IMG/VR virus record: IMGVR_UViG_3300032214_000715
Span: 1-64,000 of that record
Length of the DNA stretch: 64,000 nucleotides
Strand: one strand, 5' to 3'
The notes beneath the pieces were generated by a model that saw nothing but the letters and a program-made list of their open reading frames with translations, did not search any database and was not told where the DNA came from. Position numbers and translations under genes: made by a program. How positions within the stretch are numbered: the stretch's first letter is position 1; every line of letters starts with the position of its first letter. This document shows, in pieces, positions 7,893-25,509 of this stretch.

Positions 7893-8651
7893 ATGATAAT
7901 TAGAGACATTACAAATTATGAGCCCGCAATAGGAGACATACTTCAACTAGAGTGCGGTGATACGCTCGTTGAAGCTAGCATCAGTGACATAACTGATGAT
8001 GGTTATGTTGTTGAGATTATGAACGAAGGCGTGTTTGATAAACTTAAACAAAGAGTACAGAATATTGCCGGTGATCTTACACAACGAGTAGAGAAGCATG
8101 CTGGCAATACAGCAATGAAGTCTCTAGGTTATATATTTGGAATAGCAGCCTCACATCCAGACGGCTGGAATGTAGTTACAAAAGCACTAAAAGATGAAGA
8201 CAAATTAAAACTTCAAAGAGCAATTGATCAATTACAAACCGATCCAGAATGGGTTAATAATGAGCAACTTAAAAACGGAATGCGAGACGGAATCAGTGAT
8301 GCTCGTTCAGAGATGTCTAATCTAGACAGCAATATCAAAAACAAATTCTTCAATATTTCAAATTCAATGGAGTTTCTCAATATCAAAGAATCAACAGACG
8401 TAACGGAAGCTGAGTATCAGGGTCGTAAAGTGTCATTGGGCAAACCATTCTTAACACCAGATGGGCCCAAGAAGCGTAGTGTCTATGTTAAGAATCCCAA
8501 GGGCAATATAGTCAAGGTTAACTTTGGTGACAAGAACATGAAGATCAAGAAGAGCAACCCAAATCGTCGCAAGAGTTTTCGTGCCAGACATAATTGCGCG
8601 AATCCTGGGCCAAAGCACAAAGCTAGGTATTGGAGCTGTAAAGCTTGGTAA
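7893..8651 (+). CDS. Late protein with conserved basic C-terminal domain (RRKSFRARHNC...ARYWSC)
   Basis: Late promoter 7867-7873; internal xxE sites; C-terminal domain recalled from T4-like phages. Confidence 0.7.
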   Translation: MIIRDITNYEPAIGDILQLECGDTLVEASISDITDDGYVVEIMNEGVFDKLKQRVQNIAGDLTQRVEKHAGNTAMKSLGYIFGIAASHPDGWNVVTKALKDEDKLKLQRAIDQLQTDPEWVNNEQLKNGMRDGISDARSEMSNLDSNIKNKFFNISNSMEFLNIKESTDVTEAEYQGRKVSLGKPFLTPDGPKKRSVYVKNPKGNIVKVNFGDKNMKIKKSNPNRRKSFRARHNCANPGPKHKARYWSCKAW

Positions 8652-8654
8652 TAT

Positions 8655-9371
8655 ATGCGTATAAGCGAAATTCAACGACAACAGTCTGACACTCAACCGC
8701 TACACATGGAAGTTGATTATGAATCAGTGACTGGACTCAAGCCTGTGCCGCAGAATCCCGAGTACGCTTATACGATTGTCAACGTCAGTGATCAATTAAG
8801 TTTAGTTCAAGCCGACACTAGCGTTGAATTTTATCATGTAAAGAACGACGGCGCTCGATTCATAGGGTTTCTAAATCTTAGAAGAATCGCTCATCGCGGA
8901 TTGAAGAACCCAGTACAAGTTAGCAATGTCGCTTTAGATAGTGACTTTCGTAATCGCGGCGTAGGGTTGATGATGTATGGTGTGATATTGGGTCTTGGTC
9001 ACACTATAGTCGCTGATGATTCTCAAACATCCGAATCGCGCAAGCTGTGGGTACGTCTGTGGAACATGCCCGGAGTTACTGTACGTGGCATGATAGATGT
9101 GTTGAGTAGTTATGTTGACCCAGAGAAAGACAACTCATGGAACAATGAGGCTAAACAAATCAAGTCGCAACTCAAGCGCATAAAAGCACAACCACTTCAA
9201 GATTTTAATCGTAGGCGTGATCGTTATGGTGATGAATGGGAACGATACTCTTTTGAAGTCATGCCAAAGACCGACGGTAGTGAGTTGACTGCTCCCGGAA
9301 TATCAATCTACAGTCGCAATAGTTCATACGATGACTACGATCCTGTTGGTCTGTATGCTACTATGAATTGA
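8655..9371 (+). CDS. GNAT-fold acetyltransferase, capsid-targeting-like N-terminus
   Basis: VALDSDFRNRGVG acetyl-CoA motif A, SQT..SRKLW; MRISEI start. Confidence 0.7.
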   Translation: MRISEIQRQQSDTQPLHMEVDYESVTGLKPVPQNPEYAYTIVNVSDQLSLVQADTSVEFYHVKNDGARFIGFLNLRRIAHRGLKNPVQVSNVALDSDFRNRGVGLMMYGVILGLGHTIVADDSQTSESRKLWVRLWNMPGVTVRGMIDVLSSYVDPEKDNSWNNEAKQIKSQLKRIKAQPLQDFNRRRDRYGDEWERYSFEVMPKTDGSELTAPGISIYSRNSSYDDYDPVGLYATMN

Positions 9372-9426
9372 CTACTTGATTGCGTTAATAAATCTATACA
9401 GATAAATACTCATAGTACTATACACT

Positions 9427-10146
9427 ATGAGAGCCGATCAATTTATTACCGAAATAGAAGCACTGAGCAAGGACGAGTTTAATCCTCGGGCCGAACAGTT
9501 CAGAATTCAACATATATCCACTCAGTGGTTTGCTGATGCCAAGCCTCTAAAGTCACTGCCTGGGTACACTTACTATCTCAAGCCTGACTTCACTGGGTCT
9601 ATAGCAGTGTATATTTTTGATCCCAAGAATCCCGACATTTTCGTTGGAGAGTTAACCGCACACCCATACTGGGCTATGGATAACGCAGAGCGTAAATCAG
9701 TGTATGGGACTCCCACACTAATGGTACATCCGGATTATAAAAACCAGGGTATAGCAACAGAGCTTTATAAGTTAGTATTGCTGCCACCACCAGAGGGCGC
9801 GGGCATCACTCTACTATCAGACTCAGCGCAAACAAGTGGTGGCGCAGGAGTATGGGCATCATTAGCTAAAAAGATTCCAGGCGTGTCAGTAATTGGGTTG
9901 TTGAGAATGAGGAAACGAGACGAATACAGTGATACTGAACTAAAATTATATAATCATCTGTTTGGTGATTTGGGCGCCACCTATTATGCTCAGACCTTAC
10001 ACTATTACTTTTACTGGATTCCAGTTAGGAAAATGGGCCGTCGTTTAGAGAACGCCGTTAAAGACTCACTTGTAAAAATTTATCCCAAGGCTCATCACAG
10101 AATGTACGATAGCTTTTTAATGGCGCGATGGATGAGTGAACAATGA
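9427..10146 (+). CDS. GNAT-fold acetyltransferase, capsid-targeting-like N-terminus
   Basis: VHPDYKNQGIAT motif A, SDSAQTSGGAGVW; MRADQFITE; late promoter 9402-9408. Confidence 0.72.
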   Translation: MRADQFITEIEALSKDEFNPRAEQFRIQHISTQWFADAKPLKSLPGYTYYLKPDFTGSIAVYIFDPKNPDIFVGELTAHPYWAMDNAERKSVYGTPTLMVHPDYKNQGIATELYKLVLLPPPEGAGITLLSDSAQTSGGAGVWASLAKKIPGVSVIGLLRMRKRDEYSDTELKLYNHLFGDLGATYYAQTLHYYFYWIPVRKMGRRLENAVKDSLVKIYPKAHHRMYDSFLMARWMSEQ

Positions 10147-10793
10147 AAATACACGACATAATCAACGAAATACGTTGGACAAAAACTAATGAGCCATATA
10201 GTTCTATGGTCAGTAGAATGGCCAACATTAACAAATATGAAACACTTGGAAGCGGTGAATACGGACATGTGTTTAAGCATCCTAGCATGGATCGCGCAGT
10301 CATCAAATTGTTTGCCAATGATCGTGGGTACGCTGAGTACTTGCGTTGGATGGCTCAAAATCAACAAAACAGTTATGTGCCAAAAATTATTCCCTACGAA
10401 GACGGTAGCATTATAAAACCATATAAGCAAGTTATGAAAACCGCTGATGGTATTTTAAGTTCTCGCATAGGTATGATTCAATTGCGTAAATTAGAACCTA
10501 TATCTACTGCTCAATTATTTGAATTAAAAAAATACATATTCAATTTTTTGAATCCAGACAACAAAACTCGTATAAGCGTTCGCACACATTTCTTGTTTGA
10601 TATACGAGAAAATGATTTAGAACAGATTCAACAAAATAGTCGCGAAGCAGATCCTGATTTAAGTAATCTATTCACGGAGTTACTTCGCATGTATCGTCGT
10701 TGGGGTGGTCTAGATATACACAATCAAAATTTGATGTGGGATCCAGAAACAAATCATGTAGTATTCATTGATGTATTGAGCGTAAGCAAATGA
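10143..10793 (+). CDS. Ser/Thr protein kinase-like
   Basis: LGSGEYG P-loop, VIK, DIHNQN catalytic loop, FID; MKIHDIINE. Confidence 0.75.
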   Translation: MKIHDIINEIRWTKTNEPYSSMVSRMANINKYETLGSGEYGHVFKHPSMDRAVIKLFANDRGYAEYLRWMAQNQQNSYVPKIIPYEDGSIIKPYKQVMKTADGILSSRIGMIQLRKLEPISTAQLFELKKYIFNFLNPDNKTRISVRTHFLFDIRENDLEQIQQNSREADPDLSNLFTELLRMYRRWGGLDIHNQNLMWDPETNHVVFIDVLSVSK

Positions 10794-11419
10794 AAATTCT
10801 AGACATTATTACCTACGAGACTGACATAGATCCACTATTCATTACTAAAAATGTATTAGACGAGAGCACCGATATATCTTCAGAATTACAGCAATTAATT
10901 GATACCTCAATAATGAATGGTAACAAAATGGCAAGTTCAAGAACTCTCAAGTATCAATTATATGTTCCTCGTGTTGCTAAAGTAAATGAAGATATTAAAC
11001 CCAATGCTGAATTATGGACCAGTACTGCTGAGTTTCGTGGCGACAATGATTATACCAGTGCCTGGGCAGAATGGTGTTACTATAATATGCCCCAGTGGTT
11101 AGCTAAACGTGGTAAATTATATCAGGTTCAACCTGGCGCACGAGTATTATATATAGGTAGCGATGCGGTTGCTAAAAAGGTAGCACGAATACTAGGACAC
11201 GAATTTGCTGGCAGTAAATATACTATTCTACAATATCCTTGGGAAAAATTATCGGAACATTTTGATGCTATCAGATATCCAGCAAGATTAAAAAATCGAT
11301 TTACCAGTAGAATGAATAATATACTAATGAGTTTATGGGACGTAGAGTCTACTGCTTGGTTCAGAACTGATAAATTAAAACTGTTAAATGAAGTAGATAT
11401 AAAAACAAGAGAGTGGTAA
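10790..11419 (+). CDS. Hypothetical internal-head-like protein
   Basis: MKILDIITYE...VLDE N-terminus. Confidence 0.6.
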   Translation: MKILDIITYETDIDPLFITKNVLDESTDISSELQQLIDTSIMNGNKMASSRTLKYQLYVPRVAKVNEDIKPNAELWTSTAEFRGDNDYTSAWAEWCYYNMPQWLAKRGKLYQVQPGARVLYIGSDAVAKKVARILGHEFAGSKYTILQYPWEKLSEHFDAIRYPARLKNRFTSRMNNILMSLWDVESTAWFRTDKLKLLNEVDIKTREW

Positions 11420-12892
11420 ATGAGAGCAAATCAATTTTTGTTAGAATATAGTAGACAGATAACTGCTCAACAGTTAGGCAACAAGATATTGAATGCCATG
11501 GTCAATACCGTTGAGGGAGATATTCCCGATAATGACGTTGGTCTGGCTAGAGCTGCGTGGATATTAGGTGCCGCAAATAATCCAAGCGCGTATCGAGCTT
11601 ATAATTCGCGACTTTCAAAAGGCACTGCTATGTATCTGTTTGGCAAAATTTATATTATAAACAACGTTAATGATGCTATTCCATTAGCAGAAGAAATAAA
11701 ACCAAAAGTCATTGATTACATACTGAACTATATAGAAAGCAATGATCCCACACCAAATCATCAATACACACAATGGATGGCACGTGCGTGGGCCAATGAA
11801 AATGGCGATTGGAGATTAGAAGATTTAAATCGTAATGACATATTAACTGCCTTTCATGTCGGTAAAAGCAGTAGAAAGATTAAAGCGGAACATCTTGACA
11901 TTAACAAATTTAAAACTTATCGCGAGCTTGAGAAAACAATGCGCGAAAATTATGATATTAATGAGTTGCTAGGTAATAAAGCAACTCCAAATCAAATGGG
12001 TAAATTTGAAATCATACATAAAGATTCAGATGTCACACTAGTAAAATTAATAGATTTTCGTTCCAGCGAATACTGGGGCGAAAAATACGGTCCAAAAGAA
12101 AGACGAGCAGTATGGTGTACGCTACAGCCAAATAAATTCAATGAATATAACAGTAAGGGTCCGCTGTATGTTATAAAACCCAATCAAGAAGAATATGTGG
12201 GTGAAAAATATCAACTACATTTTCCAACTAGTCAGTTTATGGATGTAGAAGACGAGCCAGTTGATTTAGTAGTACTGCTAAAACAAAAATACCCACAACT
12301 TGAAGAAGTATTTAAAAAAATAGAGCCGGAAATAAAAGATTATGTATTTTTTGCTCCAGATGATGTTCTACTGGAATTATGGAGCAAGATATACAATATA
12401 GCAGACATGTATTATGATAAGATACTAGATGAGTGGATAGAAACAGATTATGATTATCAGAATTTAGTAGAGCCACGAGCAAAACAATTGGGATATGTTA
12501 CCGATAGTGGTGAAGTTGATTGGAATAAAATACCAAGAACTAGCAAACTTCATTATTCTAAGCATGAAAGACAGGCTGCGACGATGTTGGATGATCTTAA
12601 GACTATAAAAATCACTCGTGCTTCAGCTATAAGAAACATGGCAGCACGACTTCTTGAAACTGTTGATTATGAAGAAGAATTAACATTAAGTATATTACCT
12701 AGATTGGCCTCTGACACAATTACTTATAGTAATGTATATGGATCACGAATATCCAGTTTCTTGGGTGATTATGTGTATGTTGAGAAAATGCCAAAAGATG
12801 ATTCTTCCAAACGAAGTCAAGAAATAAAACGATCAATAAATCCCGATATGATTGTTGGCGATTGGTTTGTTAAATCAACTAGAGATTTATAA
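11420..12892 (+). CDS. WCT-domain family protein 1
   Basis: MRANQFLLEY; DPTPN..Y..W, WCT, GPLY, EKYQLHF, QFMD. Confidence 0.75.
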   Translation: MRANQFLLEYSRQITAQQLGNKILNAMVNTVEGDIPDNDVGLARAAWILGAANNPSAYRAYNSRLSKGTAMYLFGKIYIINNVNDAIPLAEEIKPKVIDYILNYIESNDPTPNHQYTQWMARAWANENGDWRLEDLNRNDILTAFHVGKSSRKIKAEHLDINKFKTYRELEKTMRENYDINELLGNKATPNQMGKFEIIHKDSDVTLVKLIDFRSSEYWGEKYGPKERRAVWCTLQPNKFNEYNSKGPLYVIKPNQEEYVGEKYQLHFPTSQFMDVEDEPVDLVVLLKQKYPQLEEVFKKIEPEIKDYVFFAPDDVLLELWSKIYNIADMYYDKILDEWIETDYDYQNLVEPRAKQLGYVTDSGEVDWNKIPRTSKLHYSKHERQAATMLDDLKTIKITRASAIRNMAARLLETVDYEEELTLSILPRLASDTITYSNVYGSRISSFLGDYVYVEKMPKDDSSKRSQEIKRSINPDMIVGDWFVKSTRDL

Positions 12893-12893
12893 T

Positions 12894-13931
12894 ATGAGAG
12901 CTACACAGTTTATAACAGAAGCCGCCACTGATATTGTGTATCATTATATGAATACATACGATGCCATTAGAACTCTGCGTGATAATCATTATTCATTAGA
13001 AAGTAGTACTGGTTTAGATGTTGAAGAAAAAATGATGCCAAAGAATAAGCACTGGTATCTAGCAACTACACGCAGCAAAGTAGGTGATTATCATATACAA
13101 AAAGCAGGTACCAGTGGAGCAATATTTGTATTGAATGGTCGTTGGTTAAATCAAAATTACGAAACTAGACCAGTAGATTATTGGTCACCAGTCTGGAATT
13201 ATAAATCATTTCTAAAGAAGGGAGTATGGAGTAAAGAAATATCAGCGTCTAGTAAACGAAGTATGTGGCAAGATAAACCCTATAGTGGTAGTGAAGCCGA
13301 AGATCGCGTATTCAGCGATACTCACGCTATACCGCTGCGTGGTAGTACACTAGAAATACACGTATTTGTAATATCTACGGTACATAAACCATTTTCTGAT
13401 ACTACAAAAAAGTCATTACAATTATCTACCTATTATGATAAAGAATCATTAGGCGCAAGAGCGGCCGAAGTTAGAGAAATATTGAGGTGGGGGCAAAAAC
13501 GAGATATACCCGTGTATCTGTATGATAATAAACAGGATTGGATAACACAGCGACCCAATAATCGTATTGACCCCAACAGTGAATATGGGCGCAAATTATT
13601 ATCTGGTAAACCCGCAAAATCTTATATTAGAACGCCATACGTATCAGATTATTATAATAATGCCCCATATTGGATTGAATTGATTGAAAAGAATCCTGCT
13701 ACTGATAAATTAAGTGAACCTGCTGATAAACTGCGATACAATATACTATATTATTGGGATACCTTTAAATCATTTCAAACAAATGTTATGGGTAATGCTG
13801 CTCGTAATCCTGAATCACCAGATTATCCTGGTGTAATAGAAATCAATAAATTTTTATCACAAAAGCGACTACCAGATATTAAATCACTACAAGAATTCTT
13901 AAAGCGTAAATGGTCCAGCTATAAACACTAA
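12894..13931 (+). CDS. Possible ADP-ribosyltransferase-fold protein
   Basis: MRATQFITE; VYHY, YLATTRS, EAEDRV spacing resembles ART catalytic strands (function tentative). Confidence 0.45.
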   Translation: MRATQFITEAATDIVYHYMNTYDAIRTLRDNHYSLESSTGLDVEEKMMPKNKHWYLATTRSKVGDYHIQKAGTSGAIFVLNGRWLNQNYETRPVDYWSPVWNYKSFLKKGVWSKEISASSKRSMWQDKPYSGSEAEDRVFSDTHAIPLRGSTLEIHVFVISTVHKPFSDTTKKSLQLSTYYDKESLGARAAEVREILRWGQKRDIPVYLYDNKQDWITQRPNNRIDPNSEYGRKLLSGKPAKSYIRTPYVSDYYNNAPYWIELIEKNPATDKLSEPADKLRYNILYYWDTFKSFQTNVMGNAARNPESPDYPGVIEINKFLSQKRLPDIKSLQEFLKRKWSSYKH

Positions 13932-13949
13932 GATGATAAATACTAAATT

Positions 13950-16105: not shown

Positions 16106-17461
16106 ATGAGATACAGTGAATTATTACTTGAATATCAGCAGACAGTTACTGTGCGTAATTATGGAGATGCTCTATTTGATAAATTCTTACGGCACGAATC
16201 TGATACTACAAAAATCAATATATTGAAACACGTACATAGCGATGCTCAATTTGAATTAATACTAAATCGTACAAAACTTAATCAAGAATTAATTGCTCGT
16301 AAAACTGAAATTGTTGGCGCGATTGTAGGAATAATTGAAGATGCTGATCCTACACCAAATAAACAATATGTAGTATGGTTAATCAGAATGTATATCAAAG
16401 ATAATCATACAGAAAAATTAGAAGATGTAGCTAGTACTATCAGTGATTATCTTAAAGATTTTGTTAATTTAAATAGTCGTGGTATTATACCCAGCCCACA
16501 AAATGATATTAATAGATATCGGAGTTTTGATGAGTTTTCTTTTGAAGTAGTATCATTACGCACAGAGTATAAAGACAAATTAAAAATACAAACTGATTTG
16601 AAAAATAGTCAAAGTCGTGTGTATTACGAAGATGAATTACTTAAAGTAATTGTGCCGTTTAATATGGAAGCCGCGATTAAGTATGGACAATATGTAAATG
16701 GTGCTACTGGTCGCTCTGAGCCAAATCAACATACTAAATGGTGTACGGCTGCCACCAAGGCTAATAATTATTTTCAAGACTATCATGATAGTGGTCCACT
16801 GTATATAGTATTCCCTAAACAACCCGAATATGAGGGAGAAAAATATCAGATACATCCTGCTACTGGTGAGTTTATGGATCCAACAAATAAACCGGCTGAT
16901 TCAAGAAAAGTATTTGATAGATTTCCCGAGTTTGCTGATACTATAATAGATGATGAGCCCGATCTAAAAAATATGATAGGGTTAACTGACGATAAAACAT
17001 TAATTGAAATATTTGACGCTTGTGTGCGAATGGCTCAGGTATCTATTGAAAATATACATAGCAATGATTCTGATGCTGAAGAGTATGGTTCTCAGTATGA
17101 TGTGTTGTACAGAGCGTTATTCTATCTATACAGTGATAAAGTTCCACACAGTACCGTACTCAATCAAATAAAACAAAAAACTGCTGATTCTAGAATTTAC
17201 AGTGTACTTCAAATGTCAGTCATAGTCAGAGACATGATTACTATTATAATAATGAAATCCACTGGTAATACCAGTAAAGATATTCAATCTCAATTCGGTG
17301 ATCTATTAGATTTAATAGAAATGGATGTCAAGGTATTAGTTAATAATCCAGACGATGATTCACAAATTCGCAAAATAACACCGATTGATAGTGAAGAAGT
17401 GGGTAATTATATAGTAGCAGCAATTGTTGGTATGGGTAATTACTTGAATCGTGACTATTAA
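16106..17461 (+). CDS. WCT-domain family protein 3
   Basis: MRYSELLLEY; DPTPNKQY..W, WCTA, GPLY, EKYQIH, EFMD. Confidence 0.75.
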   Translation: MRYSELLLEYQQTVTVRNYGDALFDKFLRHESDTTKINILKHVHSDAQFELILNRTKLNQELIARKTEIVGAIVGIIEDADPTPNKQYVVWLIRMYIKDNHTEKLEDVASTISDYLKDFVNLNSRGIIPSPQNDINRYRSFDEFSFEVVSLRTEYKDKLKIQTDLKNSQSRVYYEDELLKVIVPFNMEAAIKYGQYVNGATGRSEPNQHTKWCTAATKANNYFQDYHDSGPLYIVFPKQPEYEGEKYQIHPATGEFMDPTNKPADSRKVFDRFPEFADTIIDDEPDLKNMIGLTDDKTLIEIFDACVRMAQVSIENIHSNDSDAEEYGSQYDVLYRALFYLYSDKVPHSTVLNQIKQKTADSRIYSVLQMSVIVRDMITIIIMKSTGNTSKDIQSQFGDLLDLIEMDVKVLVNNPDDDSQIRKITPIDSEEVGNYIVAAIVGMGNYLNRDY

Positions 17462-17478
17462 AATTACTAAATACTAAT

Positions 17479-19770
17479 ATGCGTGCGTCGGAATTTTATA
17501 GATCAGTATTACTTGAATATAATCGTGATGTTACCAAGCGTCAATTTGGTAATAAATTATTGGCGGCGTGGGAGCGTGGTGCTGATTTAGGCAATGATTC
17601 ACATGCTGCTGGACATATTCTGAAACTATACGGACCAGATGAAACTCCCGAGAATATAGTAAATAAAATACTGTCAATAATAGAGCGCAGTGACCCTACA
17701 TATACTCAAGGAGGCGGAGGGTTATATGTGCCCTGGTTAGCTCGCGAATATGCTGCTGGTAATATCAAAAGATTAGAAGACTTATTTGGTTGGAAACAAT
17801 TATTAGCCGATTTTCATCGCTATAAAGTGCGTGGTAATTTCCCACAACAATATAAAGATATTGGTAAATTAACTGCTACAAGTGGTATCAGTGAGTATGG
17901 ATTGGCTGATGTGTTGGAGAAATATTCAGGTAATGTCACAACTGAATTCAGTAATACCTATCGCAGTACAGTAACCGAATTAGTTAAGCGTGGCGAAGCA
18001 ACAGAATTATATAGCGACAATAATGTCATATTGGTGAGACCATTAACAGAATCAGCCTCTAAACAATTAGGCTCGCCAAGATGGTGTACTGCGTGGGAGA
18101 AAAATAATCGTTTTCATTTCTACAATAACGCAGGTCCACTTTACATACTATTACCCTTACACCCAACTCATCGCACTGAAAGATATCAGATACATTTTGA
18201 ATCTAGACAAATAATGAATGAGCACGATAATGAGGTGTCACTCAGTATTATTTTCAAACGATTCCCAGAATTACAGAAGGTATTTAATCAAATAGTACCA
18301 GATCAGATAGACTATATTTCTACAATTCCGCACGCCACGGTAATGAAATTATTTCAGGCATGCTGTAAATTAATTACAACGCCCGAGGCAACAAATGTAA
18401 TTGAATTAGGTATAGACGATGATTCAAATACTCCAGTCAAATATTATATAGATGATATTGAAAATTTGTTATCAGATTTTGCCGATAATTTTGATGAAGA
18501 GTATATGGAAGCAATGATAACTGAAGGATTAGGAATAGATACTCATATATCTGATTTACCAAGATTAATTGGTGCTATGTTAGCTAACAACTTCTATGCC
18601 GATAGAGCTATCAATGGAAGAGAATCTCTATTAACAGGAGAATTACTAGAGCCATATATTAAGTGGATCAATGAACATATTGAAATCAGTAGAAAAGATG
18701 CCAATTTATCAGCCGAGATTCGCAGCACTATTCGCAAATCTATTAATGTTGATCGTTGGATGGCATATATGTCTATTCCGAAAAAAACATATAAATTACG
18801 AGAATCAATATTAACAGAAGATCCAGAACGAAGAAGAGAATATGTATATACCAAATACTTTGACAAGTTATTTAATAAAGCGACTAATGACGACACTGAT
18901 TTATATATGTTCTTCAATGAGCGTGGGGATGATGTCAGTGACGAATATTTTGATTTCTTCACTCGCGAGTGGTACAAACCAGGAGTAGTAGAGAAAATAA
19001 TTCAGATACTGGTAGATAGTGATCCAACTCGTGAGTTAATATATATTGACTGGTTAGCTCGTCAATACTTAAATGAAACTATTCCTAGTCTAGAAGATGT
19101 TTATTCTTATGAGAATCCTCTTAGACAGTATCAACGATATAAGAACTCACCCGATTTCCCACAAGAATACAAAGATATCAATCGTTTAAATGGTTCCAAC
19201 TTCATGGAGTTAATGACAAAATGGTATAAACCTCCAGAAAACAAAAACCCAGGAAAAACTTTAGTCGTAGACGATAACGAACTATATACTGCTATGGTAC
19301 CATTAGATGAACCGGGTTCTCAAAAACTAGGGTTGGGTACTAACTGGTGTACGGCATATACTCAAGCACCGTGTAGATATGTTGATTACAGTGAGCGCGG
19401 TGAATTAATAGTATTGATACCTAAGAAACCAGCACAAGCCGGAGAAAAGTATCAGATACATTTAAGACTAAGACTAAGAAAATCAGATTCTGGTATTCGT
19501 GGATGGCAAGTTATTACAGACATGGGAGATTTTAACGAATATTTCGGTAAAGATAGTGAAATTGCTTTGGGCGAGTGTAGCACTCAAACAAATCATGATA
19601 TCAGATTTCGTGGAATAGTTAATAGATTTGGTGCTGGTCCAGTACTTAATACTCTAAACAAACTAGGTGCTCTACAAGCCACTGGAAAATATAAGTCTCA
19701 TGCTAATCAAAATATCTCAGATATTGCTGAGTTATATGGTCAATTATATGAATATGATTGGAAAGACTGA
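17479..19770 (+). CDS. WCT-domain family protein 4 (two domain copies)
   Basis: VLLEY; WCTA twice, EKYQIH/ERYQIH; internal LRESILTE; CTAAATA 17467-17473. Confidence 0.75.
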   Translation: MRASEFYRSVLLEYNRDVTKRQFGNKLLAAWERGADLGNDSHAAGHILKLYGPDETPENIVNKILSIIERSDPTYTQGGGGLYVPWLAREYAAGNIKRLEDLFGWKQLLADFHRYKVRGNFPQQYKDIGKLTATSGISEYGLADVLEKYSGNVTTEFSNTYRSTVTELVKRGEATELYSDNNVILVRPLTESASKQLGSPRWCTAWEKNNRFHFYNNAGPLYILLPLHPTHRTERYQIHFESRQIMNEHDNEVSLSIIFKRFPELQKVFNQIVPDQIDYISTIPHATVMKLFQACCKLITTPEATNVIELGIDDDSNTPVKYYIDDIENLLSDFADNFDEEYMEAMITEGLGIDTHISDLPRLIGAMLANNFYADRAINGRESLLTGELLEPYIKWINEHIEISRKDANLSAEIRSTIRKSINVDRWMAYMSIPKKTYKLRESILTEDPERRREYVYTKYFDKLFNKATNDDTDLYMFFNERGDDVSDEYFDFFTREWYKPGVVEKIIQILVDSDPTRELIYIDWLARQYLNETIPSLEDVYSYENPLRQYQRYKNSPDFPQEYKDINRLNGSNFMELMTKWYKPPENKNPGKTLVVDDNELYTAMVPLDEPGSQKLGLGTNWCTAYTQAPCRYVDYSERGELIVLIPKKPAQAGEKYQIHLRLRLRKSDSGIRGWQVITDMGDFNEYFGKDSEIALGECSTQTNHDIRFRGIVNRFGAGPVLNTLNKLGALQATGKYKSHANQNISDIAELYGQLYEYDWKD

Positions 19771-19772: not shown

Positions 19773-20447
19773 ATGAGAGTCAAAGACTTATTAGAATATG
19801 ACAGTGATAGTCCAGCCGGCAAACAGATAATGGACATATTGTCTGATAACGGATATGAATTATTAGGCAGCGGTGTAGATAAATCAGTATGGGCAAAAAC
19901 TGAAGACAATGTTGTTGGTATATTGATGCCGTCATCAAAAAAGATAGATGATGCTATGAAGAGCTTTTTAGTTCTGTATAACTTGGCAAAAGAATTTCCC
20001 AATAATAAACATTTGCCACGATATGTTAAGTTTAGAGATGAATCGGGTAAAGAATCGCACTATAGTGAATTTACTGTAGCGGGACGAAAATTCATACAAT
20101 TTGGTATGGAACGATTAATATCAATTGACTGGAATAGCGATCTTATGAATGTTTTATATCAAGTAAGAAACTTTGCTCAATTTCGTCATCATATGCGTTG
20201 GCCCGAAATATGGACTAGATTATGTGGTATGTCTAAGTATTTAAAATCTAAAGAGATTAAATCTCGTTTAGAAGATGTAGAGATATCATTCAAAGAGTTA
20301 TACGATACTATGAAATTAATTATTGATCGTGGTATGGCGGCTGACTTATATATTGATAGATTTGAAAATAATATAATGATGCGTAAAGATGGTACTCCAG
20401 TAATAGTTGACCCATATTACTACACTTCAGTTAATAGACCCAAGTAA
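19773..20447 (+). CDS. Ser/Thr protein kinase-like
   Basis: MRVKDLLEY; LGSG, DRFENNIM, VIVDPY. Confidence 0.7.
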   Translation: MRVKDLLEYDSDSPAGKQIMDILSDNGYELLGSGVDKSVWAKTEDNVVGILMPSSKKIDDAMKSFLVLYNLAKEFPNNKHLPRYVKFRDESGKESHYSEFTVAGRKFIQFGMERLISIDWNSDLMNVLYQVRNFAQFRHHMRWPEIWTRLCGMSKYLKSKEIKSRLEDVEISFKELYDTMKLIIDRGMAADLYIDRFENNIMMRKDGTPVIVDPYYYTSVNRPK

Positions 20448-20450
20448 ATT

Positions 20451-21914
20451 ATGAGAGCAGATCAGTTTATATTATTAGAGTATGATGCCAAGAAAACGAT
20501 ACAGGCACTGGGCAATAAATTATTAATTGCTCTGGCTAAAACTCACCCATTTTTTATACCTGATCATCTATATGGCGCAAGTGTATTAGCAGCAACGGCA
20601 TTTTTTCCAGCAAAATATGATCAGGGTCGTGATATTGTGATGGATATTGTTGGTAAAATGGCGGCATTTAGTTCATTAAATGCTCCCGAAGTACTTGAAA
20701 AATTCAAAGAGCCAATATTAATCGCATTGTTGAAAGAGATAGAAGAAAAAGATCCAACCGCACACAAAGAATATACTCCGTGGTTAGCCCGGGTATGGGC
20801 CGCGGCTGGTCAGCCGAACTCTACTGAGGGAAGTCTTAAACTTGAAGATTTAAATCGTGGTAATGTCTTGGGCGCTTTTGATATAGGTAAGCGTAAAAGA
20901 AAGATTAAACCAGAACACAGTGATATTGGTAGATATCGCAGTTACGCGGAGTTTGAAAACACAATTAAATCAAATTACAATATATATAATTTACTGGGCG
21001 TGGAAGACCCAGATGAAGATCCAGGTAATTATGAGGTTGTTTATAATGACGGCAGTATTGTGCGTGTAATTGTTCCGCTAGATAAACAAGCTGCTTGTTA
21101 TTGGGGGAAAAATACTGAGTGGTGTACTGCTACTCGCACTGGAAAAAATTATTATGACTACTATAGTAGTCGTGGCAAACTATACATAATACTACCATAT
21201 AACCCAAAATATCCCGAAGAAAAATATCAATTACATTTTGAAACTGAACAATTCAAAGATGAAAATGATGATGATGTAGATTTGTCAGCAATACTACGCA
21301 AGTATCCTGGATTAGAAGAATTCTTTGTCAGACAAATCCCCCAATTAAAAAAATACATGGCGTTTATTAAAGATGACACACTGACTGAAATTATAAAAGT
21401 AATACTACCAGTGGCACTTGATACGGCATGGGAGATTGTAAATGAGTGGGAATCAAATGATGAGTACTGGTATTCATGGCGAGCAGAACAAGCAATTGAA
21501 TTGGGATATGTCACTGATGATGGAGATATAGATTGGGATCGTGTAAATGAAGATGATCGTCTAAATGATTATACTAGATATAGTGATGAAGCTCGTAGAT
21601 TTATTAATGATGTAAAAAGTATCGGCAACTTAACTGGTAAAACAATTAAAAAATTAACCACCGAGTATGTAGAAAGCGGGCATGCTGAAGAATCTATGCC
21701 AACGATAAGTTTATTACCATATATATTAATCTATTACGTAAATGGATTCAAGAATGGTGATAATGGTGATTCTTTACGCTCAGTGTTTTTTAAGTTTTCT
21801 TTCTATGAGTCTGATTACTATAATACTGTCAGTGTTAATCGTGAATTAAAAAAATATATTCAAAAAATAGGCGAAGTTGATGATATTTCCATTATGGCAA
21901 GAACCAACATATAA
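20451..21914 (+). CDS. WCT-domain family protein 5 (closest to 11420)
   Basis: MRADQFILLEY; LEDLNR, KIKPEH.DI, WCTA, EKYQLHF. Confidence 0.75.
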   Translation: MRADQFILLEYDAKKTIQALGNKLLIALAKTHPFFIPDHLYGASVLAATAFFPAKYDQGRDIVMDIVGKMAAFSSLNAPEVLEKFKEPILIALLKEIEEKDPTAHKEYTPWLARVWAAAGQPNSTEGSLKLEDLNRGNVLGAFDIGKRKRKIKPEHSDIGRYRSYAEFENTIKSNYNIYNLLGVEDPDEDPGNYEVVYNDGSIVRVIVPLDKQAACYWGKNTEWCTATRTGKNYYDYYSSRGKLYIILPYNPKYPEEKYQLHFETEQFKDENDDDVDLSAILRKYPGLEEFFVRQIPQLKKYMAFIKDDTLTEIIKVILPVALDTAWEIVNEWESNDEYWYSWRAEQAIELGYVTDDGDIDWDRVNEDDRLNDYTRYSDEARRFINDVKSIGNLTGKTIKKLTTEYVESGHAEESMPTISLLPYILIYYVNGFKNGDNGDSLRSVFFKFSFYESDYYNTVSVNRELKKYIQKIGEVDDISIMARTNI

Positions 21915-21928
21915 CGATAAATATTACT

Positions 21929-22360
21929 ATGAAAATACTACTATCACTATTACTAGCAATATCTGTTTTATCAGCAACTGCCGCAGAAAAATCCGGCGTG
22001 GCATATAACTATAAAGTCACTAGAGTCGTTGATGGTGACACCGTTGGATTTGAAGCATCGTTTTTACCTGTCCCTCTCAAAAAAGAGTTAAGCGTCAGAG
22101 TGTATGGTGTTGATACTCCAGAAAAGGGACATCGTGCTAAGTGTGACGCAGAAAACAAGCGTGGATTAGAAGCAACTGCGTTTACTAAAAAAATGATAAC
22201 CTCGGCCAAAAGAACACAGATTGTTATCATTGATTGGGACAAATACGGTGGGCGTGTATTGGGCGATGTTCTAATAGATGGAATCAGTTTGCGTTCTATG
22301 TTGATTAGCAGCGGATATGCTAGACCGTATTTTGGCGAAGCAAAACAAAGCTGGTGTTAA
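21929..22360 (+). CDS. Secreted thermonuclease (SNase-like)
   Basis: Signal peptide; VVDGDT, RVYGVDTPE, DKYGGRVL; late promoter 21917-21923. Confidence 0.9.
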   Translation: MKILLSLLLAISVLSATAAEKSGVAYNYKVTRVVDGDTVGFEASFLPVPLKKELSVRVYGVDTPEKGHRAKCDAENKRGLEATAFTKKMITSAKRTQIVIIDWDKYGGRVLGDVLIDGISLRSMLISSGYARPYFGEAKQSWC

Positions 22361-22380
22361 TATACTAGGAAAAATATATC

Positions 22381-22890
22381 ATGAAGAAAAAATTAGATGA
22401 GAATAAAATTGTTGGTAGTTTTTTTGGAATACCAGTTTCAAAAAAACAACTGAATGAATTTGCTAATCTATCTAAGTCAGCGATCACAGATGACGATGTT
22501 GTTATTGACAGACCGGATCAAGTCACCGATGTAAGTTCAGCCAGAAATGAACTACTAAGAATAATGAAGTTGGCTGGGCAAGGCGGTTCTCAAAATAAAC
22601 CCGCTGGTTGGAATCTAGTATTATACAACGATGATATTACTCCGGGAGAAGCAGTTATTGACGGGCTTAAAAGTGTCATGAACATGAGTGGGGCTGCGAT
22701 ATCAAGAGTTATACATGACTGTACTCTTAAGGGTCACGCAGTTCTTGGAACATATGCAATAGAAGACAAAGCACTCAGATTAAGAGATTCACTGAAACAA
22801 GCAATAGACAGTAATCGTGAACATGTCGGTGGAAATAATACTAACGGGCCCTGGGATGTAAAGATAGAAGTGCTTAAAGCAGGCGACTAA
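22381..22890 (+). CDS. ClpS-like domain protein with N-terminal extension
   Basis: LVLYNDDITPGEAVI..L...H..G.AV matches ClpS core. Confidence 0.6.
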   Translation: MKKKLDENKIVGSFFGIPVSKKQLNEFANLSKSAITDDDVVIDRPDQVTDVSSARNELLRIMKLAGQGGSQNKPAGWNLVLYNDDITPGEAVIDGLKSVMNMSGAAISRVIHDCTLKGHAVLGTYAIEDKALRLRDSLKQAIDSNREHVGGNNTNGPWDVKIEVLKAGD

Positions 22891-22891
22891 T

Positions 22892-23356
22892 GTGAAAATT
22901 TTTGATATTCTCAATGAGATAGCCAATAATCCTTATCCAGTTGAGTTGGCAAAAGATACTGGTGACACTATCAATTACAAATTTGTCACTGACAGTGGTG
23001 TAGATTATTGGGTTAGTTTTAGAACAGAAAAAAATAAAGATAAGCGTGGTGCTTGGTTGGTGGTAACAGCGGGCAAACCAACAGGGCTAAAAGACAAAAA
23101 CTATAAAAACAAAACAGGAATTACTGGTACTGGCGATCAATTTCGTGTATTCGCATCTATAGGAAATGCCATCAATCAATATGTTAATTCCTCTCATCAA
23201 CCAGACTTTATTACATTTACAGCAAGAGAAGAATCACGCGTCAAATTGTACAATTTGATTACTAGAAATATCAGTGATTATGTCAGTGGATGGACTCGCG
23301 GAAAAGTAATAAGAACTCCCAAATACACTTTATACACTGTAGTAAAGCAAAAATAG
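22892..23356 (+). CDS. Hypothetical internal-head-like protein (GTG start)
   Basis: MKIFDILNE N-terminus. Confidence 0.6.
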   Translation: MKIFDILNEIANNPYPVELAKDTGDTINYKFVTDSGVDYWVSFRTEKNKDKRGAWLVVTAGKPTGLKDKNYKNKTGITGTGDQFRVFASIGNAINQYVNSSHQPDFITFTAREESRVKLYNLITRNISDYVSGWTRGKVIRTPKYTLYTVVKQK

Positions 23357-23476
23357 ATAAATACTAATAGCACACTACCTTGGGACTTTTTAGTCACGGT
23401 GTGTTCAGAGCGGCTGCTGCTATTTCTACTCTTATCGCCATTCGTGTAGAATAAAGTGAGCACTAATTTATGTATT

Positions 23477-24112
23477 ATGCTGTCAAAAGAAATTATAAAT
23501 GAGATGGATAGAAGAAATTTTCTAGGGGCAACTTTAGGAACAGTCGCCGGTGTCGGACAAGCACAGGCAGCACCCTATGTGAATTTTGATAATATGACTA
23601 CTCAACAGCATAACTTTTATAGAGAAAAAATCTCTGATCTTCAATGGAGAGCATCAAGAATATTAGGAAATCTTAAAGAGACATTAGCCTCCAAAAATGC
23701 AGCAGCCTATAAAAAAATAGAAAATAAAAAAGTGACGGTGTTTTACTATAAGTGGCTAGCAGGCGTTACAGAAAAGGGTTTAGAACTGGACGTTACTGTT
23801 TTTTGGGATTTGCCAGACGATAGTATTGCTTGTACACTCGGGCATGAATTGGCACACATTGTGCTAGGGCACAATTCAAATGTAAATAATAAGCAGGAAG
23901 AACACGCCGCCGATTTATGGGGAGCAAAATTGGCGCAACAAGCAGGATACTCAGTAGAAGAGGCATTACGAGGTGTTTATGAGGCCGGGGGACAGTATGG
24001 CAAGGGAAGCGCTAGTCATCCGAGTTATACTGAAAGAGTATTACATCTTAGAAAAAATGGATATCCATTAAAAATCAATGGAACATTTCATCCAGAAACA
24101 ATAAAAAAATAA
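23477..24112 (+). CDS. M48-family zinc metallopeptidase with Tat-like signal
   Basis: HELAH, E..AD..G, SHP..R motifs; IINE then MDRRNFLG...AQAA. Confidence 0.78.
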   Translation: MLSKEIINEMDRRNFLGATLGTVAGVGQAQAAPYVNFDNMTTQQHNFYREKISDLQWRASRILGNLKETLASKNAAAYKKIENKKVTVFYYKWLAGVTEKGLELDVTVFWDLPDDSIACTLGHELAHIVLGHNSNVNNKQEEHAADLWGAKLAQQAGYSVEEALRGVYEAGGQYGKGSASHPSYTERVLHLRKNGYPLKINGTFHPETIKK

Positions 24113-24144
24113 CGAACATAAAGTGAGTACTAATATCAAGTATT

Positions 24145-25509
24145 ATGCGTGTAAATGAAATAGAACGATATCCGGCCGATTCTGATAACAACGATATACA
24201 AGCTAATCGTGAGTCTATGGTATCCGAAGCAGAAACTAGAACCAAAGCCGCAGATATAAAATCAAATCGTGTTCATCTAATCGTGTTTGATATAGATGAC
24301 ACCTTATTTCATACCACGGCAAAGATCAATGTTATAAAGCCAGACGGTACTAAACTTAGTTTAACTAATCAACAATACAACAACTACGTTTCTGAACCCG
24401 GTGATAAATTTGACTTTGAAGAGTTTAAGGACGCGGAAAAGTTTAGTCGCGAAAGTGATCCTATCCGTCCAATGATAGCAAAGCTAAAAGCAATACTAAA
24501 CAACTCACGAACTAGCAAAATCATTATGCTTACCGCACGTAGTGATTTTGACGATAGAGATAAATTTCTAGAAACGTTTGCCAGATACGGCATAGATATG
24601 AGTCGCGTACACGTACATCGTGCTGGTAACTTGAATCACCCAAATAGTCCAGCAGAAAAAAAGGCAGTGTTTATTAGAAACTATCTGAATACTAATAAGT
24701 ATGATCGCGTTACAATGTACGATGATAGTATGAAGAATCTACGTGTATTCTCTGAATTAAAGAGTGAGTATCCGAACGTACAATTTTCTCCCTACTTCGT
24801 AGATCATCACGGAAGAATTAAGTTAATTCGTGAGTCTATGGTATCCGAAGCAGAAACTAGAACCAAAGCCGCAAAAGAAATCAACAAGACTTTCAAAGAA
24901 AGTGGCTACAAAAAATTAGGTAGTGGCGCAGAAGCAACTGTATGGGCAAAAGATGAGCATAGCGTTATAAAAATAATTATGCCAGAAGATCGCTCAAGTA
25001 TGGATTCTGCTGTGCGTACATTTAAGAAGTTCTATGAATTTTGTATTAAAAATGCGGAGCAGTCAAATTTGCCACGATTCGTACAAGTTACCAAAAACGG
25101 ACACGTGGAAACATTTACTGCTGCCAATCGTGAATTTACTATGATCGGCATGGAACGTCTAAAGCCTCTAAAAGAGGGTAGCTTCAGTCAAGCGCTAATA
25201 TGGATGATGAGCGATCTTGTCACTCACGGAAAAAGATGGAACGAAGCACACAAATTAATGACTAAGCCATCAACATGGAAACACTGGGACGGTCCACCAA
25301 CCGTAAAAGAGTTAGTAGCTAAAATAAAAAATCTTGATGATCTAACTTATGCCAAGTTTGATGTGCTATATACTCTAATGCTGCTATTGTACAAGCGAGG
25401 CAAGCTAGACAAAGTTGGTTGGGATTTACACACAGAGAATGTCATGCAGCGTTCTGACGGAACACTGGTTATAGTTGATCCATGGTTTGCCAGTGAGATG
25501 AAAGATTAA
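24145..25509 (+). CDS. HAD phosphatase / protein kinase fusion
   Basis: FDIDDTL, LTAR, YDD (HAD); LGSGAE, VIK, DLHTEN, IVDPW (kinase). Confidence 0.8.
   Translation: MRVNEIERYPADSDNNDIQANRESMVSEAETRTKAADIKSNRVHLIVFDIDDTLFHTTAKINVIKPDGTKLSLTNQQYNNYVSEPGDKFDFEEFKDAEKFSRESDPIRPMIAKLKAILNNSRTSKIIMLTARSDFDDRDKFLETFARYGIDMSRVHVHRAGNLNHPNSPAEKKAVFIRNYLNTNKYDRVTMYDDSMKNLRVFSELKSEYPNVQFSPYFVDHHGRIKLIRESMVSEAETRTKAAKEINKTFKESGYKKLGSGAEATVWAKDEHSVIKIIMPEDRSSMDSAVRTFKKFYEFCIKNAEQSNLPRFVQVTKNGHVETFTAANREFTMIGMERLKPLKEGSFSQALIWMMSDLVTHGKRWNEAHKLMTKPSTWKHWDGPPTVKELVAKIKNLDDLTYAKFDVLYTLMLLLYKRGKLDKVGWDLHTENVMQRSDGTLVIVDPWFASEMKD
24207..24873 (+). repeat. 46-bp perfect direct repeat flanking the HAD domain
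   Basis: TCGTGAGTCTATGGTATCCGAAGCAGAAACTAGAACCAAAGCCGCA at 24207-24252 and 24828-24873. Confidence 0.92.

What the first reader, a model, noticed from the sequence alone, without database searches (positions are those of the whole stretch)
7893..25509. 17 kb cluster of likely capsid-packaged, ejected effector enzymes
Seen: at least 14 neighbouring late genes begin M-(R/K)-x-x-(E/D/Q)-(F/I/L)...(I/L)-x-E (MRADQFITE, MKIHDIINE, MRANQFLLE, MRATQFITE, MRYSELLLE, MRVKDLLE, MKIFDILNE), with ATAAATA promoters between groups. Known: the T4 capsid-targeting sequence of IPII/IPIII is MKTYQEFIAE and the prohead protease cuts after (I/L)-x-E. Inference: two GNATs, three kinase domains, a HAD phosphatase, a possible ART and a peptidase are loaded into the head and injected, forming a pre-made post-translational modification kit for host takeover or anti-defence.
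Basis: partly seen in the sequence, partly recalled or inferred. Interest (0 to 1): 0.78.

Follow-up and report, generated by a model that had tools for sequence, protein, structure and literature searches.

The report
T4-like capsid-targeting leaders on phage enzymes
A 17 kb block of late genes in an uncultivated giant phage puts the same nine-residue N-terminal tag, almost the T4 capsid-targeting sequence, on at least 14 unrelated proteins (kinases, acetyltransferases, ADP-ribosyltransferase-like proteins, a phosphatase, a superoxide dismutase), which most likely marks them for loading into the phage head and delivery into the next host.

Summary
In window 8655-25509, 14 of 17 + strand genes start M-[RK]-x-x-[EDQ]-[FILY], against 2 of about 97 ORFs elsewhere (Fisher p 2.5e-13). 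Codons differ between the copies, so selection acts on the peptide.

The tag is a clade-wide feature. In 77 related metagenomic loci, 370 of 1438 ORFs carry it, with consensus MRAxEF[LI]xE, on at least 76 unrelated protein clusters. T4 IPII and IPIII start MKTYQEFIAE.

Two related contigs place a tagged gene directly beside a T4-type portal, gp21-type protease, scaffold and gp23 capsid module. In the cultured relative PA5oct, two tagged proteins (gp150, gp205) are mass-spectrometry virion proteins.

The capsid-targeting reading is therefore well supported by comparison, but not shown: there are no proteomics, and this genome's own protease was not found. The window is part of a genome of at least 341 kb, of which I read about 100 kb.

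- More than half of the cluster is a large uncharacterised paralog family.
- The M48 peptidase (Tat-like signal), the nuclease (Sec signal) and the ClpS-like gene lack the tag.
- The adjacent superoxide dismutase and a gene at 54362-55207 carry it.

I class it as a new variant of a known kind.

The parts
7866..7873 (+). GATAAATA, T4-late-promoter-like motif 10 nt before gene 7884/7893
7893..8651 (+). 252-aa protein with a diverged leader (MIIRDITNYE) and a very basic C-terminal domain (phrog_7595). Orthologs of this domain in 6-8 related loci carry canonical leaders.
8655..9371 (+). GNAT-like protein 1, leader MRISEIQRQ; acetyl-CoA motif RNRGVG
9401..9408 (+). GATAAATA motif 18 nt before gene 9427
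9427..10146 (+). GNAT-like protein 2, leader MRADQFITE. Pfam Acetyltransf_1 E 0.0019, below the cut-off. All 13 weak PDB profile hits are GNATs.
10143..10793 (+). Protein kinase-like (T7 gp0.7-type, phrog_15752 E 1.8e-12), leader MKIHDIINE
10790..11419 (+). 209-aa protein, leader MKILDIITYE. Only embedding and structure leads to the ART superfamily (AcrIF11, ART-PolyVal, RES, PARP), scores 0.81-0.87.
11420..12892 (+). Paralog family member 1 (motifs DPT..W, LED, DINxY, WCTA, GPLY, EKYQxHF), leader MRANQFLLE|Y
12894..13931 (+). 345-aa protein with a DarT/Tpt1-like ADP-ribosyltransferase fold, leader MRATQFITE. YH at residues 16-17 and ExE at 134-136 are invariant in 5 orthologs.
13935..13942 (+). 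GATAAATA motif 7 nt before gene 13950
13950..16103 (+). Paralog family member 2 with C-terminal DUF4116 repeats, leader MRVKEYYSNKSVLLE|Y
16106..17461 (+). Paralog family member 3, leader MRYSELLLE|Y
17467..17474 (+). CTAAATAC promoter-like motif 4 nt before gene 17479
17479..19770 (+). Paralog family member 4 with two core modules, leader MRASEFYRSVLLE|Y
19773..20447 (+). Kinase-like protein homologous to the C-terminal half of gene 24145 (E 2e-29), leader MRVKDLLE|Y
20451..21914 (+). Paralog family member 5, leader MRADQFILLE|Y. AlphaFold model pLDDT 87.7; residues 1-10 have low confidence and the first helix starts at residue 13.
21916..21923 (+). GATAAATA motif 5 nt before gene 21929
21929..22360 (+). 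Staphylococcal-nuclease homologue with a Sec-type signal peptide and no leader. It is in the late block but probably exported, not head cargo.
22381..22890 (+). ClpS-like adaptor with a 72-aa N-terminal extension, no leader
22892..23356 (+). 154-aa protein (weak DUF6934), GTG start, leader MKIFDILNE. Its domain is fused to other leader proteins in relatives.
23356..23363 (+). GATAAATA motif upstream of the peptidase gene
23456..24112 (+). M48-type zinc peptidase (HELAH) with a Tat-like signal (MDRRNFLG...AQA). The start is ambiguous and a leader-like MLSKEIINE appears only from the ATG at 23477.
24145..25509 (+). Fusion of a HAD phosphatase (motif DIDDT) and a kinase-like domain, leader MRVNEIERY. 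An exact 45-nt direct repeat (24208-24252 and 24829-24873) marks the N-terminus and the junction. In locus L139 the two halves are separate leader genes.
25835..26392 (-). Fe/Mn superoxide dismutase whose probable start (MRDIIDLVES) lies 5 nt after GATAAATA (26405-26398). Four of six SOD orthologs in related loci start MRA[CTSQ][ED]FLTES.
54362..55207 (-). 282-aa protein outside the block with leader MKINQIIVE, close to that of PA5oct virion protein gp150 (MKINDIITE)

Best explanation
The shared N-terminus is a T4-type capsid-targeting propeptide. These genes are transcribed late, from T4-late-like (G/C)ATAAATA promoters. Each protein is made with a flexible 9-15 residue leader (consensus MRAxEF[LI]xE) that binds it to the scaffolding core of the assembling prohead. 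A gp21-family prohead protease then cuts after the Glu of [LI]-x-E, and the mature enzyme stays in the head with the DNA and enters the next cell with it.

The cargo in this window is two GNAT-like acyltransferases, three kinase-like domains, a HAD phosphatase, one DarT/Tpt1-like ADP-ribosyltransferase-fold protein plus a possible second, a basic DNA-binding-like protein, six modules of a large uncharacterised family, and probably a superoxide dismutase.

Shown here: the leader, its clade-wide spread on unrelated proteins, its likeness to the T4 CTS, and its physical linkage to T4-type head genes in relatives. Inferred: targeting, cleavage, ejection, and action on host proteins or nucleic acids.
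For: (1) Enrichment: 14 of 17 genes in the block against 2 of about 97 elsewhere, p 2.5e-13.

(2) Peptide-level selection: codons differ between copies. In 309 non-identical leaders, codon use at E5, F6 and E9 equals that of the gene bodies.

(3) Positions not in the search pattern are also conserved in 370 leaders from 77 related loci: A3 52%, [LI]7 67%, E9 62%. [LI]xE falls in residues 5-14 in 76% of leader ORFs against 15% of other ORFs, and 8% at an internal control position.

(4) Cargo is unrelated: at least 76 sequence clusters. These include amidoligase, GGACT, GH19 and NT5C proteins, GNAT, GP88, DUF6267 and HTH proteins, and SOD. Orthologs of the window's cargo carry the leader, and domains are shuffled between leader genes.

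(5) T4 IPII and IPIII begin MKTYQEFIAE. In T4 the first 10 residues suffice for packaging, residues 4 and 7 matter for targeting and residues 8 and 10 for cleavage (PMC9026906). The clade consensus keeps F, [IL] and E in that register.

(6) Loci L163 and L178 place a leader gene 1-3 genes after a portal, gp21-type protease, scaffold and gp23-type capsid module that is 41-68% identical to PA5oct. The capsid proteins carry Pfam Gp23, and their N-termini hold several L-x-E sites.

(7) In PA5oct, gp150 (MKINDIITE, lying between portal and protease) and gp205 (a homolog of the window paralogs, MKLFEVFTLYED) are annotated as ESI-MS/MS virion proteins.

(8) In the AlphaFold model of gene 20451, residues 1-10 have low confidence and the ordered fold starts at residue 13.
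Against: There is no proteomic or experimental evidence for this phage.

Its own head module was not found. I could read only about 100 kb of a genome of at least 341 kb, and two database tricks failed.

Several window leaders fit the cleavage rule poorly: MRISEIQRQ, MRVNEIERY and the I-x-x-Y-E forms.

In the paralog family the residues just after the leader (EY.R..TA) are as conserved as the leader. Leader-like sequences also occur inside fusion proteins. Part of the motif could therefore belong to the mature fold.

Codon 2 is AGA in 77% of leaders against 31% of Arg codons in gene bodies. In addition, 15-16 of the 17 genes lack a Shine-Dalgarno sequence. The M-R/K part may therefore serve translation.

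The PA5oct virion data do not say head rather than tail. PA5oct gp205 and the L132 homolog lie near tail sheath genes.
Confidence: 0.65

Rival explanations
1. The leader is a virion-incorporation or sorting signal, but not for the head interior. It might direct proteins to the tail or baseplate, or act as a tag read by the phage's own ClpX/ClpP/ClpS system to limit free enzyme in the producing cell.
For: PA5oct gp205 and the L132 homolog lie next to tail sheath genes. The window encodes ClpX, two ClpP-like proteins and a ClpS-like protein, the last of these inside the block. The virion mass spectrometry does not localise the proteins.
Against: The motif matches the T4 head CTS, including the cleavage register. 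PA5oct gp150 sits between portal and prohead protease, where T4 has core protein genes. The L163 and L178 family genes follow the capsid gene. No known tail-targeting signal has this form.
Confidence: 0.12
2. The conserved start is mainly an mRNA or translation feature. These late genes lack Shine-Dalgarno sequences and start a few nucleotides after the promoter or after the preceding stop codon, so an A-rich, unstructured 5' coding region is selected.
For: Only 1-2 of 17 block genes have a Shine-Dalgarno sequence, against 21 of 48 other genes. Codon 2 is AGA in 77% of leaders against 31% in gene bodies, and AAA in 80% against 67%. Promoter-to-ATG spacing of 4-7 nt suggests leaderless mRNAs.
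Against: Synonymous codon use at E5, F6 and E9 equals that of gene bodies. Selection for specific residues (F6, [LI]7, E9) has no translational rationale. The SD-less, leaderless nuclease gene 21929 starts MKILLS with a signal peptide instead.
Confidence: 0.08
3. The shared start is a recombination cassette or a relic of common descent: promoter plus first codons kept because they mediate gene shuffling, with no targeting role for the peptide.
For: Domains are shuffled between leader genes. An exact 45-nt repeat marks a fusion junction in gene 24145. Similar ideas were raised for the T-even internal protein loci (my own knowledge of that literature; not checked here).
Against: The leaders are not conserved at the DNA level. 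Conservation at the amino-acid level across proteins only 25-45% identical, and across at least 76 unrelated clusters, needs selection on the peptide.
Confidence: 0.05

Closest known systems
Phage T4 internal proteins IPI, IPII, IPIII and Alt with their capsid-targeting sequence
   Same: A short N-terminal propeptide (T4 MKTYQEFIAE; here MRAxEF[LI]xE) shared by otherwise unrelated late proteins and ending in (L/I)-x-E. The genes are scattered or clustered, variable between relatives, and include an ADP-ribosyltransferase (Alt). Relatives have a T4-type gp20/21/22/23 head module (PMC9026906, PMC3012670).
   Different: The leader is one residue shorter. There are at least 14-16 cargo genes per genome here against about 4 in T4. 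The cargo is mostly large enzymes and a paralog family with more than 10,000 clusters, rather than small basic proteins. The host phages are uncultivated jumbo phages only distantly related to T4. Most of the genes lack Shine-Dalgarno sequences. Nothing has been tested biochemically.
Inner-body and ejection proteins of phiKZ, 201phi2-1 and SPN3US
   Same: Giant phages that load many proteins, including enzymes, into the head. These proteins are processed after Glu by a T4-related prohead protease and injected (PMC5694885; PMC13282480).
   Different: Those propeptides are mostly longer than 100 residues, are not a common short tag, and are cut at S/A/G-x-E. No sequence relation to the proteins here was seen.
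Phage P1 Dar proteins (DarB N-terminal packaging signal)
   Same: An N-terminal signal of fewer than 30 residues suffices to load a large anti-restriction enzyme, or a reporter, into the head (PMC9024508).
   Different: No consensus is shared among the P1 Dar proteins, no protease-site logic applies, and the head type differs.
Polyvalent proteins of phages and conjugative elements (Kinase-PolyVal, ART-PolyVal and others)
   Same: The same kinds of effector domains (kinase, ART, metallopeptidase) are thought to be delivered with the DNA. Gene 24145 gives a weak Kinase-PolyVal hit, and gene 10790 has ART-PolyVal leads (PMC5512222 listed).
   Different: There the domains are strung into one giant polypeptide. 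Here each is mostly a separate gene with its own leader.
T7 gp0.7 protein kinase
   Same: The best family match of genes 10143 and 24145 (phrog_15752, E 1.8e-12 and 4.9e-10).
   Different: T7 gp0.7 is an early, non-virion protein. Here the kinases are late genes with a packaging-type leader.

Membership tests
T4-type CTS cargo (internal/ejected head proteins) | N-terminal propeptide of about 10 residues resembling MKTYQEFIAE and ending in (L/I)-x-E | tested here: met
   The window leaders and the consensus MRAxEF[LI]xE of 370 leaders were compared with T4 IPII and IPIII read from NC_000866. A few window genes fit only loosely.
T4-type CTS cargo (internal/ejected head proteins) | The same leader on proteins that are otherwise unrelated | tested here: met
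   At least 76 single-linkage clusters of mature parts, with different Pfam/PHROG families and folds.
T4-type CTS cargo (internal/ejected head proteins) | The phage builds a scaffold-core prohead with a gp21-family protease | tested here: inconclusive
   Met in relatives: L163, L178 and PA5oct have portal, gp21-like protease, gp22-like scaffold and gp23 capsid genes. Not located in this genome, where only about 100 kb of at least 341 kb could be read.
T4-type CTS cargo (internal/ejected head proteins) | Late expression | tested here: inconclusive
   (G/C)ATAAATA motifs like the T4 late promoter TATAAATA lie before gene groups (11 against 4.8 expected). There are no transcript data, and no gp55 homolog was sought successfully.
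T4-type CTS cargo (internal/ejected head proteins) | Presence in virions, with the propeptide removed after Glu | not testable with these tools
   Indirect only: PA5oct gp150 and gp205 are ESI-MS/MS virion proteins according to the record annotation. Their N-termini are not reported.
T4-type CTS cargo (internal/ejected head proteins) | Ejection into the host with the DNA | not testable with these tools
   None.
GNAT acetyltransferases (genes 8655, 9427) | Match to a GNAT profile, and the acetyl-CoA motif R/Q-x-x-G-x-G/A | tested here: inconclusive
   Pfam Acetyltransf_1 E 0.0019, 18.9 bits against a cut-off of 20.7, for 9427 only. The family profile hits 13 PDB chains, all GNATs, at E 0.015-0.7. 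The motifs RNRGVG and KNQGIA are present.
Protein kinases (genes 10143, 19773, C-terminal half of 24145) | Profile match plus a glycine-rich loop, a catalytic D-x-H/x-x-N loop and a metal-binding Asp | tested here: met
   phrog_15752 (T7 0.7-type kinase) at E 1.8e-12 and 4.9e-10, and weak Kinase-PolyVal. 19773 matches the C-terminal half of 24145 at E 2e-29. LGSG loops, DIHNQN/DLHTEN and a following (I/V)D are visible in the sequences. Pfam thresholds are not reached.
HAD phosphatase (N-terminal half of 24145) | Motif I DxDxT and a HAD profile match | tested here: met
   FDIDDT is present. DUF2608 (HAD-type) scores 24.8 bits against a cut-off of 22.6, Acid_phosphat_B gives E 9e-6, and phrog_415 gives E 3.3e-12.
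ADP-ribosyltransferase superfamily, DarT/Tpt1-like (gene 12894) | ART fold with an NAD-binding His and a catalytic Glu | tested here: inconclusive
   The model is only moderate (pLDDT 62). The top PDB matches are DarT and Tpt1/KptA (E about 1e-2, probability 0.97-0.99, TM 0.43-0.60 by target), followed by other ARTs. AFDB hits are DarT, DUF2971 and DUF4433. Y16-H17 and E134-x-E136 are invariant in 5 orthologs. There is no HMM hit.
PcfJ-like (PF14284) for the paralog family | Significant match to the Pfam model | tested here: not met
   Only 1 of 50 members matches, at E 0.069. There are only leads: embedding score 0.90-0.91 and Foldseek rank 17 at E 0.45. I do not file the family as PcfJ.

The most novel reading that the evidence does not exclude
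Cleavage at ...[LI]-x-E|Y would leave every member of the large paralog family with an N-terminal tyrosine; E10 and Y11 are invariant or nearly so in 50 members. About 30% of all leaders would be left with Y or L. These are bacterial N-degrons read by ClpS. The injected proteins would then be self-timing 'hit and run' effectors, destroyed by the host N-end-rule pathway. The leaderless ClpS-like gene inside the block and the phage ClpX/ClpP nearby would tune that timer. Prohead-protease processing would thus double as the step that arms the degron.
Probability: 0.1. Interest if true: 0.85.

Novelty: new variant of a known kind. Interest (0 to 1): 0.68.

Why it matters
If the leader works as in T4, a nine-residue motif becomes a sequence-only predictor of which proteins are packed into the virion and injected. 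It would apply to a very abundant, largely uncultivated clade of jumbo phages. The paralog family alone has 10,746 clusters at 50% identity, and the capsid search was saturated at 8,000 hits.

That would make a hard question, what a phage delivers before any gene is expressed, answerable from metagenomes.

It would also:
- extend the cargo of T4-type heads from a few small anti-restriction proteins to kinases, acyltransferases, ADP-ribosyltransferases, amidoligases, a lysozyme-type hydrolase and a superoxide dismutase;
- give a function context to a huge orphan family;
- offer a ready-made tag for loading foreign proteins into jumbo-phage heads, with PA5oct as a cultured test bed.

Tried and rejected
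- Megablast of the block against 50,697 phage records found no match. tblastn of the 516-aa protein at 28000-29553 also found none.
- I tried several ways to find this genome's own gp21-type protease. A 7-sequence protease alignment was too diverse for pattern search. A capsid-profile search, meant to spot the contig by its length, listed only the best 120 of 8,000 hits.
- I walked the contig with look-ups and scans to 93.4 kb, and 8.4 kb upstream on a 341-kb scaffold. This gave only early-type genes and a tRNA-rich stretch. I stopped the walk as too costly.
- Two look-ups were lost because I gave minus-strand references with the stop codon at the wrong end. The same 3-nt shift affects the minus-strand queries; it is harmless for HMM results.
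- Function of the paralog family: no Pfam or PHROG function, no Foldseek PDB match, only weak GNAT-like similarity of residues 193-300 (Z up to 6), and the PcfJ lead is not confirmed by HMM. Function stays unknown.
- Sigma-70 promoter-like and terminator-like sites are not enriched in the block.
- I rejected 'DNA repeats or recent duplication' as the source of the shared start, because the codons differ.
- I rejected 'the peptidase is head cargo', because it has a Tat-like signal and an ambiguous start.
- phmmer of gene 24145 against PDB sequences found nothing.

Full report
**Source.** The window is the first 64 kb of a 239,163-bp JGI metagenome contig (Ga0335250_1210714, also IMGVR_UViG_3300032214_000715). 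The same genes lie on a 341,154-bp ENA scaffold, so the genome is at least 341 kb: a jumbo phage. No cultured phage is close at the DNA level.

**The observation.** Between 7884 and 25509 there are 17 tightly packed + strand genes.
- A fifteenth (7893, MIIRDITNYE) is a diverged form.
- Only 2 of about 97 other ORFs in the window match. Fisher p = 2.5e-13.
- The copies use different codons.
- GATAAATA or CTAAATAC lies 4-18 nt before genes 7884, 9427, 13950, 17479 and 21929, and further upstream of 23456. GATAAATA occurs 11 times in the window against 4.8 expected, always in a spacer and pointing at a gene.

**What the genes are.**
- *Paralog family.* Five genes (11420, 13950, 16106, 17479, 20451) hold six modules of one family, with motifs DPT..W, LED, DINxY, WCTA, GPLY and EKYQxHF. 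Together they make up more than half of the block.
  - The family is huge: 10,746 clusters at 50% identity.
  - Its function is unknown. A good AlphaFold model (pLDDT 87.7) has no PDB match.
  - A PcfJ lead from embeddings fails the Pfam test.
  - Structure neighbours in the ESM Atlas carry variable LRR, Ank, DUF4116 or WG repeats after the same core. Gene 13950 has DUF4116.
- *Kinases.* 10143, 19773 and the C-terminal half of 24145 are kinase-like.
- *Phosphatase.* The N-terminal half of 24145 is a HAD phosphatase.
- *GNATs.* 8655 and 9427 are weak but consistent GNAT matches.
- *ART fold.* 12894 folds like DarT/Tpt1 ADP-ribosyltransferases, with conserved YH and ExE. 10790 has only ART-superfamily leads.
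- *Basic protein.* 7893 ends in a very basic domain, which is the commonest cargo domain after the paralogs in related phages.
- *No leader.* Three genes have none: a nuclease with a Sec signal, a ClpS-like protein, and an M48 peptidase with a Tat-like signal.

**The leader is a clade-wide tag.**
- A profile of the paralog family found 76 loci in IMG/VR, and two more came from exact look-ups. These loci also share SOD, IF-1, ClpX, Hsp20 and QueC with the window.
- In 77 of the related loci, 370 of 1438 ORFs of at least 70 aa start with the pattern.
- Positions I did not search for are conserved too: A3 52%, [LI]7 67%, E9 62%.
- [LI]-x-E lies in residues 5-14 in 76% of leader ORFs, against 15% of other ORFs and 8% at an internal control position.
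- The mature parts fall into at least 76 unrelated clusters. They include amidoligase, GGACT, GH19, NT5C, GNAT, GP88, DUF6267 and HTH proteins.
- Orthologs of nearly every window cargo carry the leader. Domains are exchanged between leader genes: the two halves of 24145 are separate leader genes in L139.
- Four of six SOD orthologs start MRA[CTSQ][ED]FLTES, followed by a short linker and then the normal SOD start. The window SOD (25835-26392, minus strand) most likely starts MRDIIDLVES, 5 nt after a GATAAATA.
- Gene 54362-55207 (MKINQIIVE) is a further candidate.

**Link to T4.**
- T4 IPII and IPIII start MKTYQEFIAE. In T4 these 10 residues suffice for packaging. Residues 4 and 7 matter for targeting and residues 8 and 10 for cleavage by gp21. 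The CTS has been proposed as the way T4-like phages load diverse proteins (PMC9026906; PMC3012670). The consensus here keeps E-F-[IL]-x-E.
- The only cultured relatives of the paralog family are PA5oct-type Pseudomonas jumbo phages. PA5oct has a T4-order head module, with a gp21-like protease that hits T4-like proteases across 2,551 records.
- PA5oct gp205 (a family homolog, MKLFEVFTLYED) and gp150 (73 aa, between portal and protease, MKINDIITE) are both ESI-MS/MS virion proteins in the record.
- In loci L163 and L178 a family gene with the leader follows directly after portal, protease, scaffold and gp23-type capsid genes. Those capsid proteins begin with several L-x-E sites.
- The AlphaFold model leaves residues 1-10 disordered before the first helix.

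**Caveats.**
- I could not find the head genes of this genome.
- Some window leaders fit the cleavage rule loosely.
- In the paralog family the residues after the leader (EY.R..TA) are equally conserved, and leader-like stretches occur inside fusion proteins. These could be internal cleavage sites or part of the fold.
- Codon 2 is biased to AGA or AAA, and 15-16 of the 17 genes lack a Shine-Dalgarno sequence, against 27 of 48 other genes. Translation may therefore shape the first two residues, but codon use at E5, F6 and E9 is ordinary.
- Virion detection in PA5oct does not prove a head location.

**Verdict.** The capsid-targeting interpretation is the best explanation (confidence about 0.65) but is untested. 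The cargo list is partly corrected.

The principle is known from T4. It is new that:
- the tag is conserved in distant jumbo phages;
- it is used on dozens of enzyme families, with many genes per genome;
- it marks a very large orphan family.

I found no description of this in the searched literature.

Noticed in passing
window 40155-46207, minus strand: Ten small genes (62-93 aa) all start MNER[IL]KEL, and several share a later KFAELI motif: a second array of paralogs with a conserved N-terminus, on the early-looking strand. Two more copies lie further along the contig (L122 7271-8084).
   Followed up: partly
window 29575-29660, 56400-56485, 61653-61725: Each of three GIY-YIG-type homing endonuclease genes (29650, 56475, 61713, + strand) is preceded by (G/C)ATAAATA, a conserved inverted repeat of about 35 nt (agtgtagt...actact), and then an AGGAG ribosome site. 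This recalls late-promoter plus hairpin control of T4 intron endonucleases (my recollection; not tested).
   Followed up: no
window 22381-22890 (+), 25506-26639 (-), 30452-35032 (-): The phage carries a proteostasis and stress set: ClpS-like, IscA-type Fe-S protein, Fe/Mn SOD, IF-1, two ClpP-like proteins, Hsp20 and ClpX.
   Followed up: partly
window 24208-24252 and 24829-24873: An exact 45-nt direct repeat (peptide RESMVSEAETRTKAA) sits near the N-terminus and at the HAD-kinase junction of gene 24145. The second copy aligns with the leader of paralog 19773, which suggests a recent gene fusion and perhaps an internal cleavage site.
   Followed up: partly
window 7884-25509: Almost none of the late block genes has a Shine-Dalgarno sequence. 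Many start 1-5 nt after the previous stop codon or 4-7 nt after the promoter motif (possible leaderless or coupled translation). Codon 2 is AGA in 77% of 309 related leaders.
   Followed up: yes
window 60975-61577 (-), 1580-2098 (+): A PP-loop ATPase (ATP_bind_3; its N-terminus recalls QueC, which was not tested) and a dCMP deaminase hint at modified DNA bases. A DUF2828/DUF7788 protein lies at 57292-58719.
   Followed up: no
window 60842-60931 (-): ARAGORN calls a tRNA-Ser with the unusual anticodon ACT. The contig has a tRNA-rich stretch at about 73-83 kb, outside the window (L098).
   Followed up: no
L094 1-3813: A related 52.9-kb contig carries CsgG, CsgF, FecR and a CHASE2-guanylate cyclase gene on the opposite strand, just upstream of its leader-gene cluster. 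This is either phage-borne curli-secretion genes or a chimeric or prophage-border contig.
   Followed up: no
window 21929-22360 and 23456-24112: Two late genes encode exported enzymes: a staphylococcal-type nuclease with a Sec signal and an M48 zinc peptidase with a Tat-like signal. They are embedded among the leader genes.
   Followed up: partly
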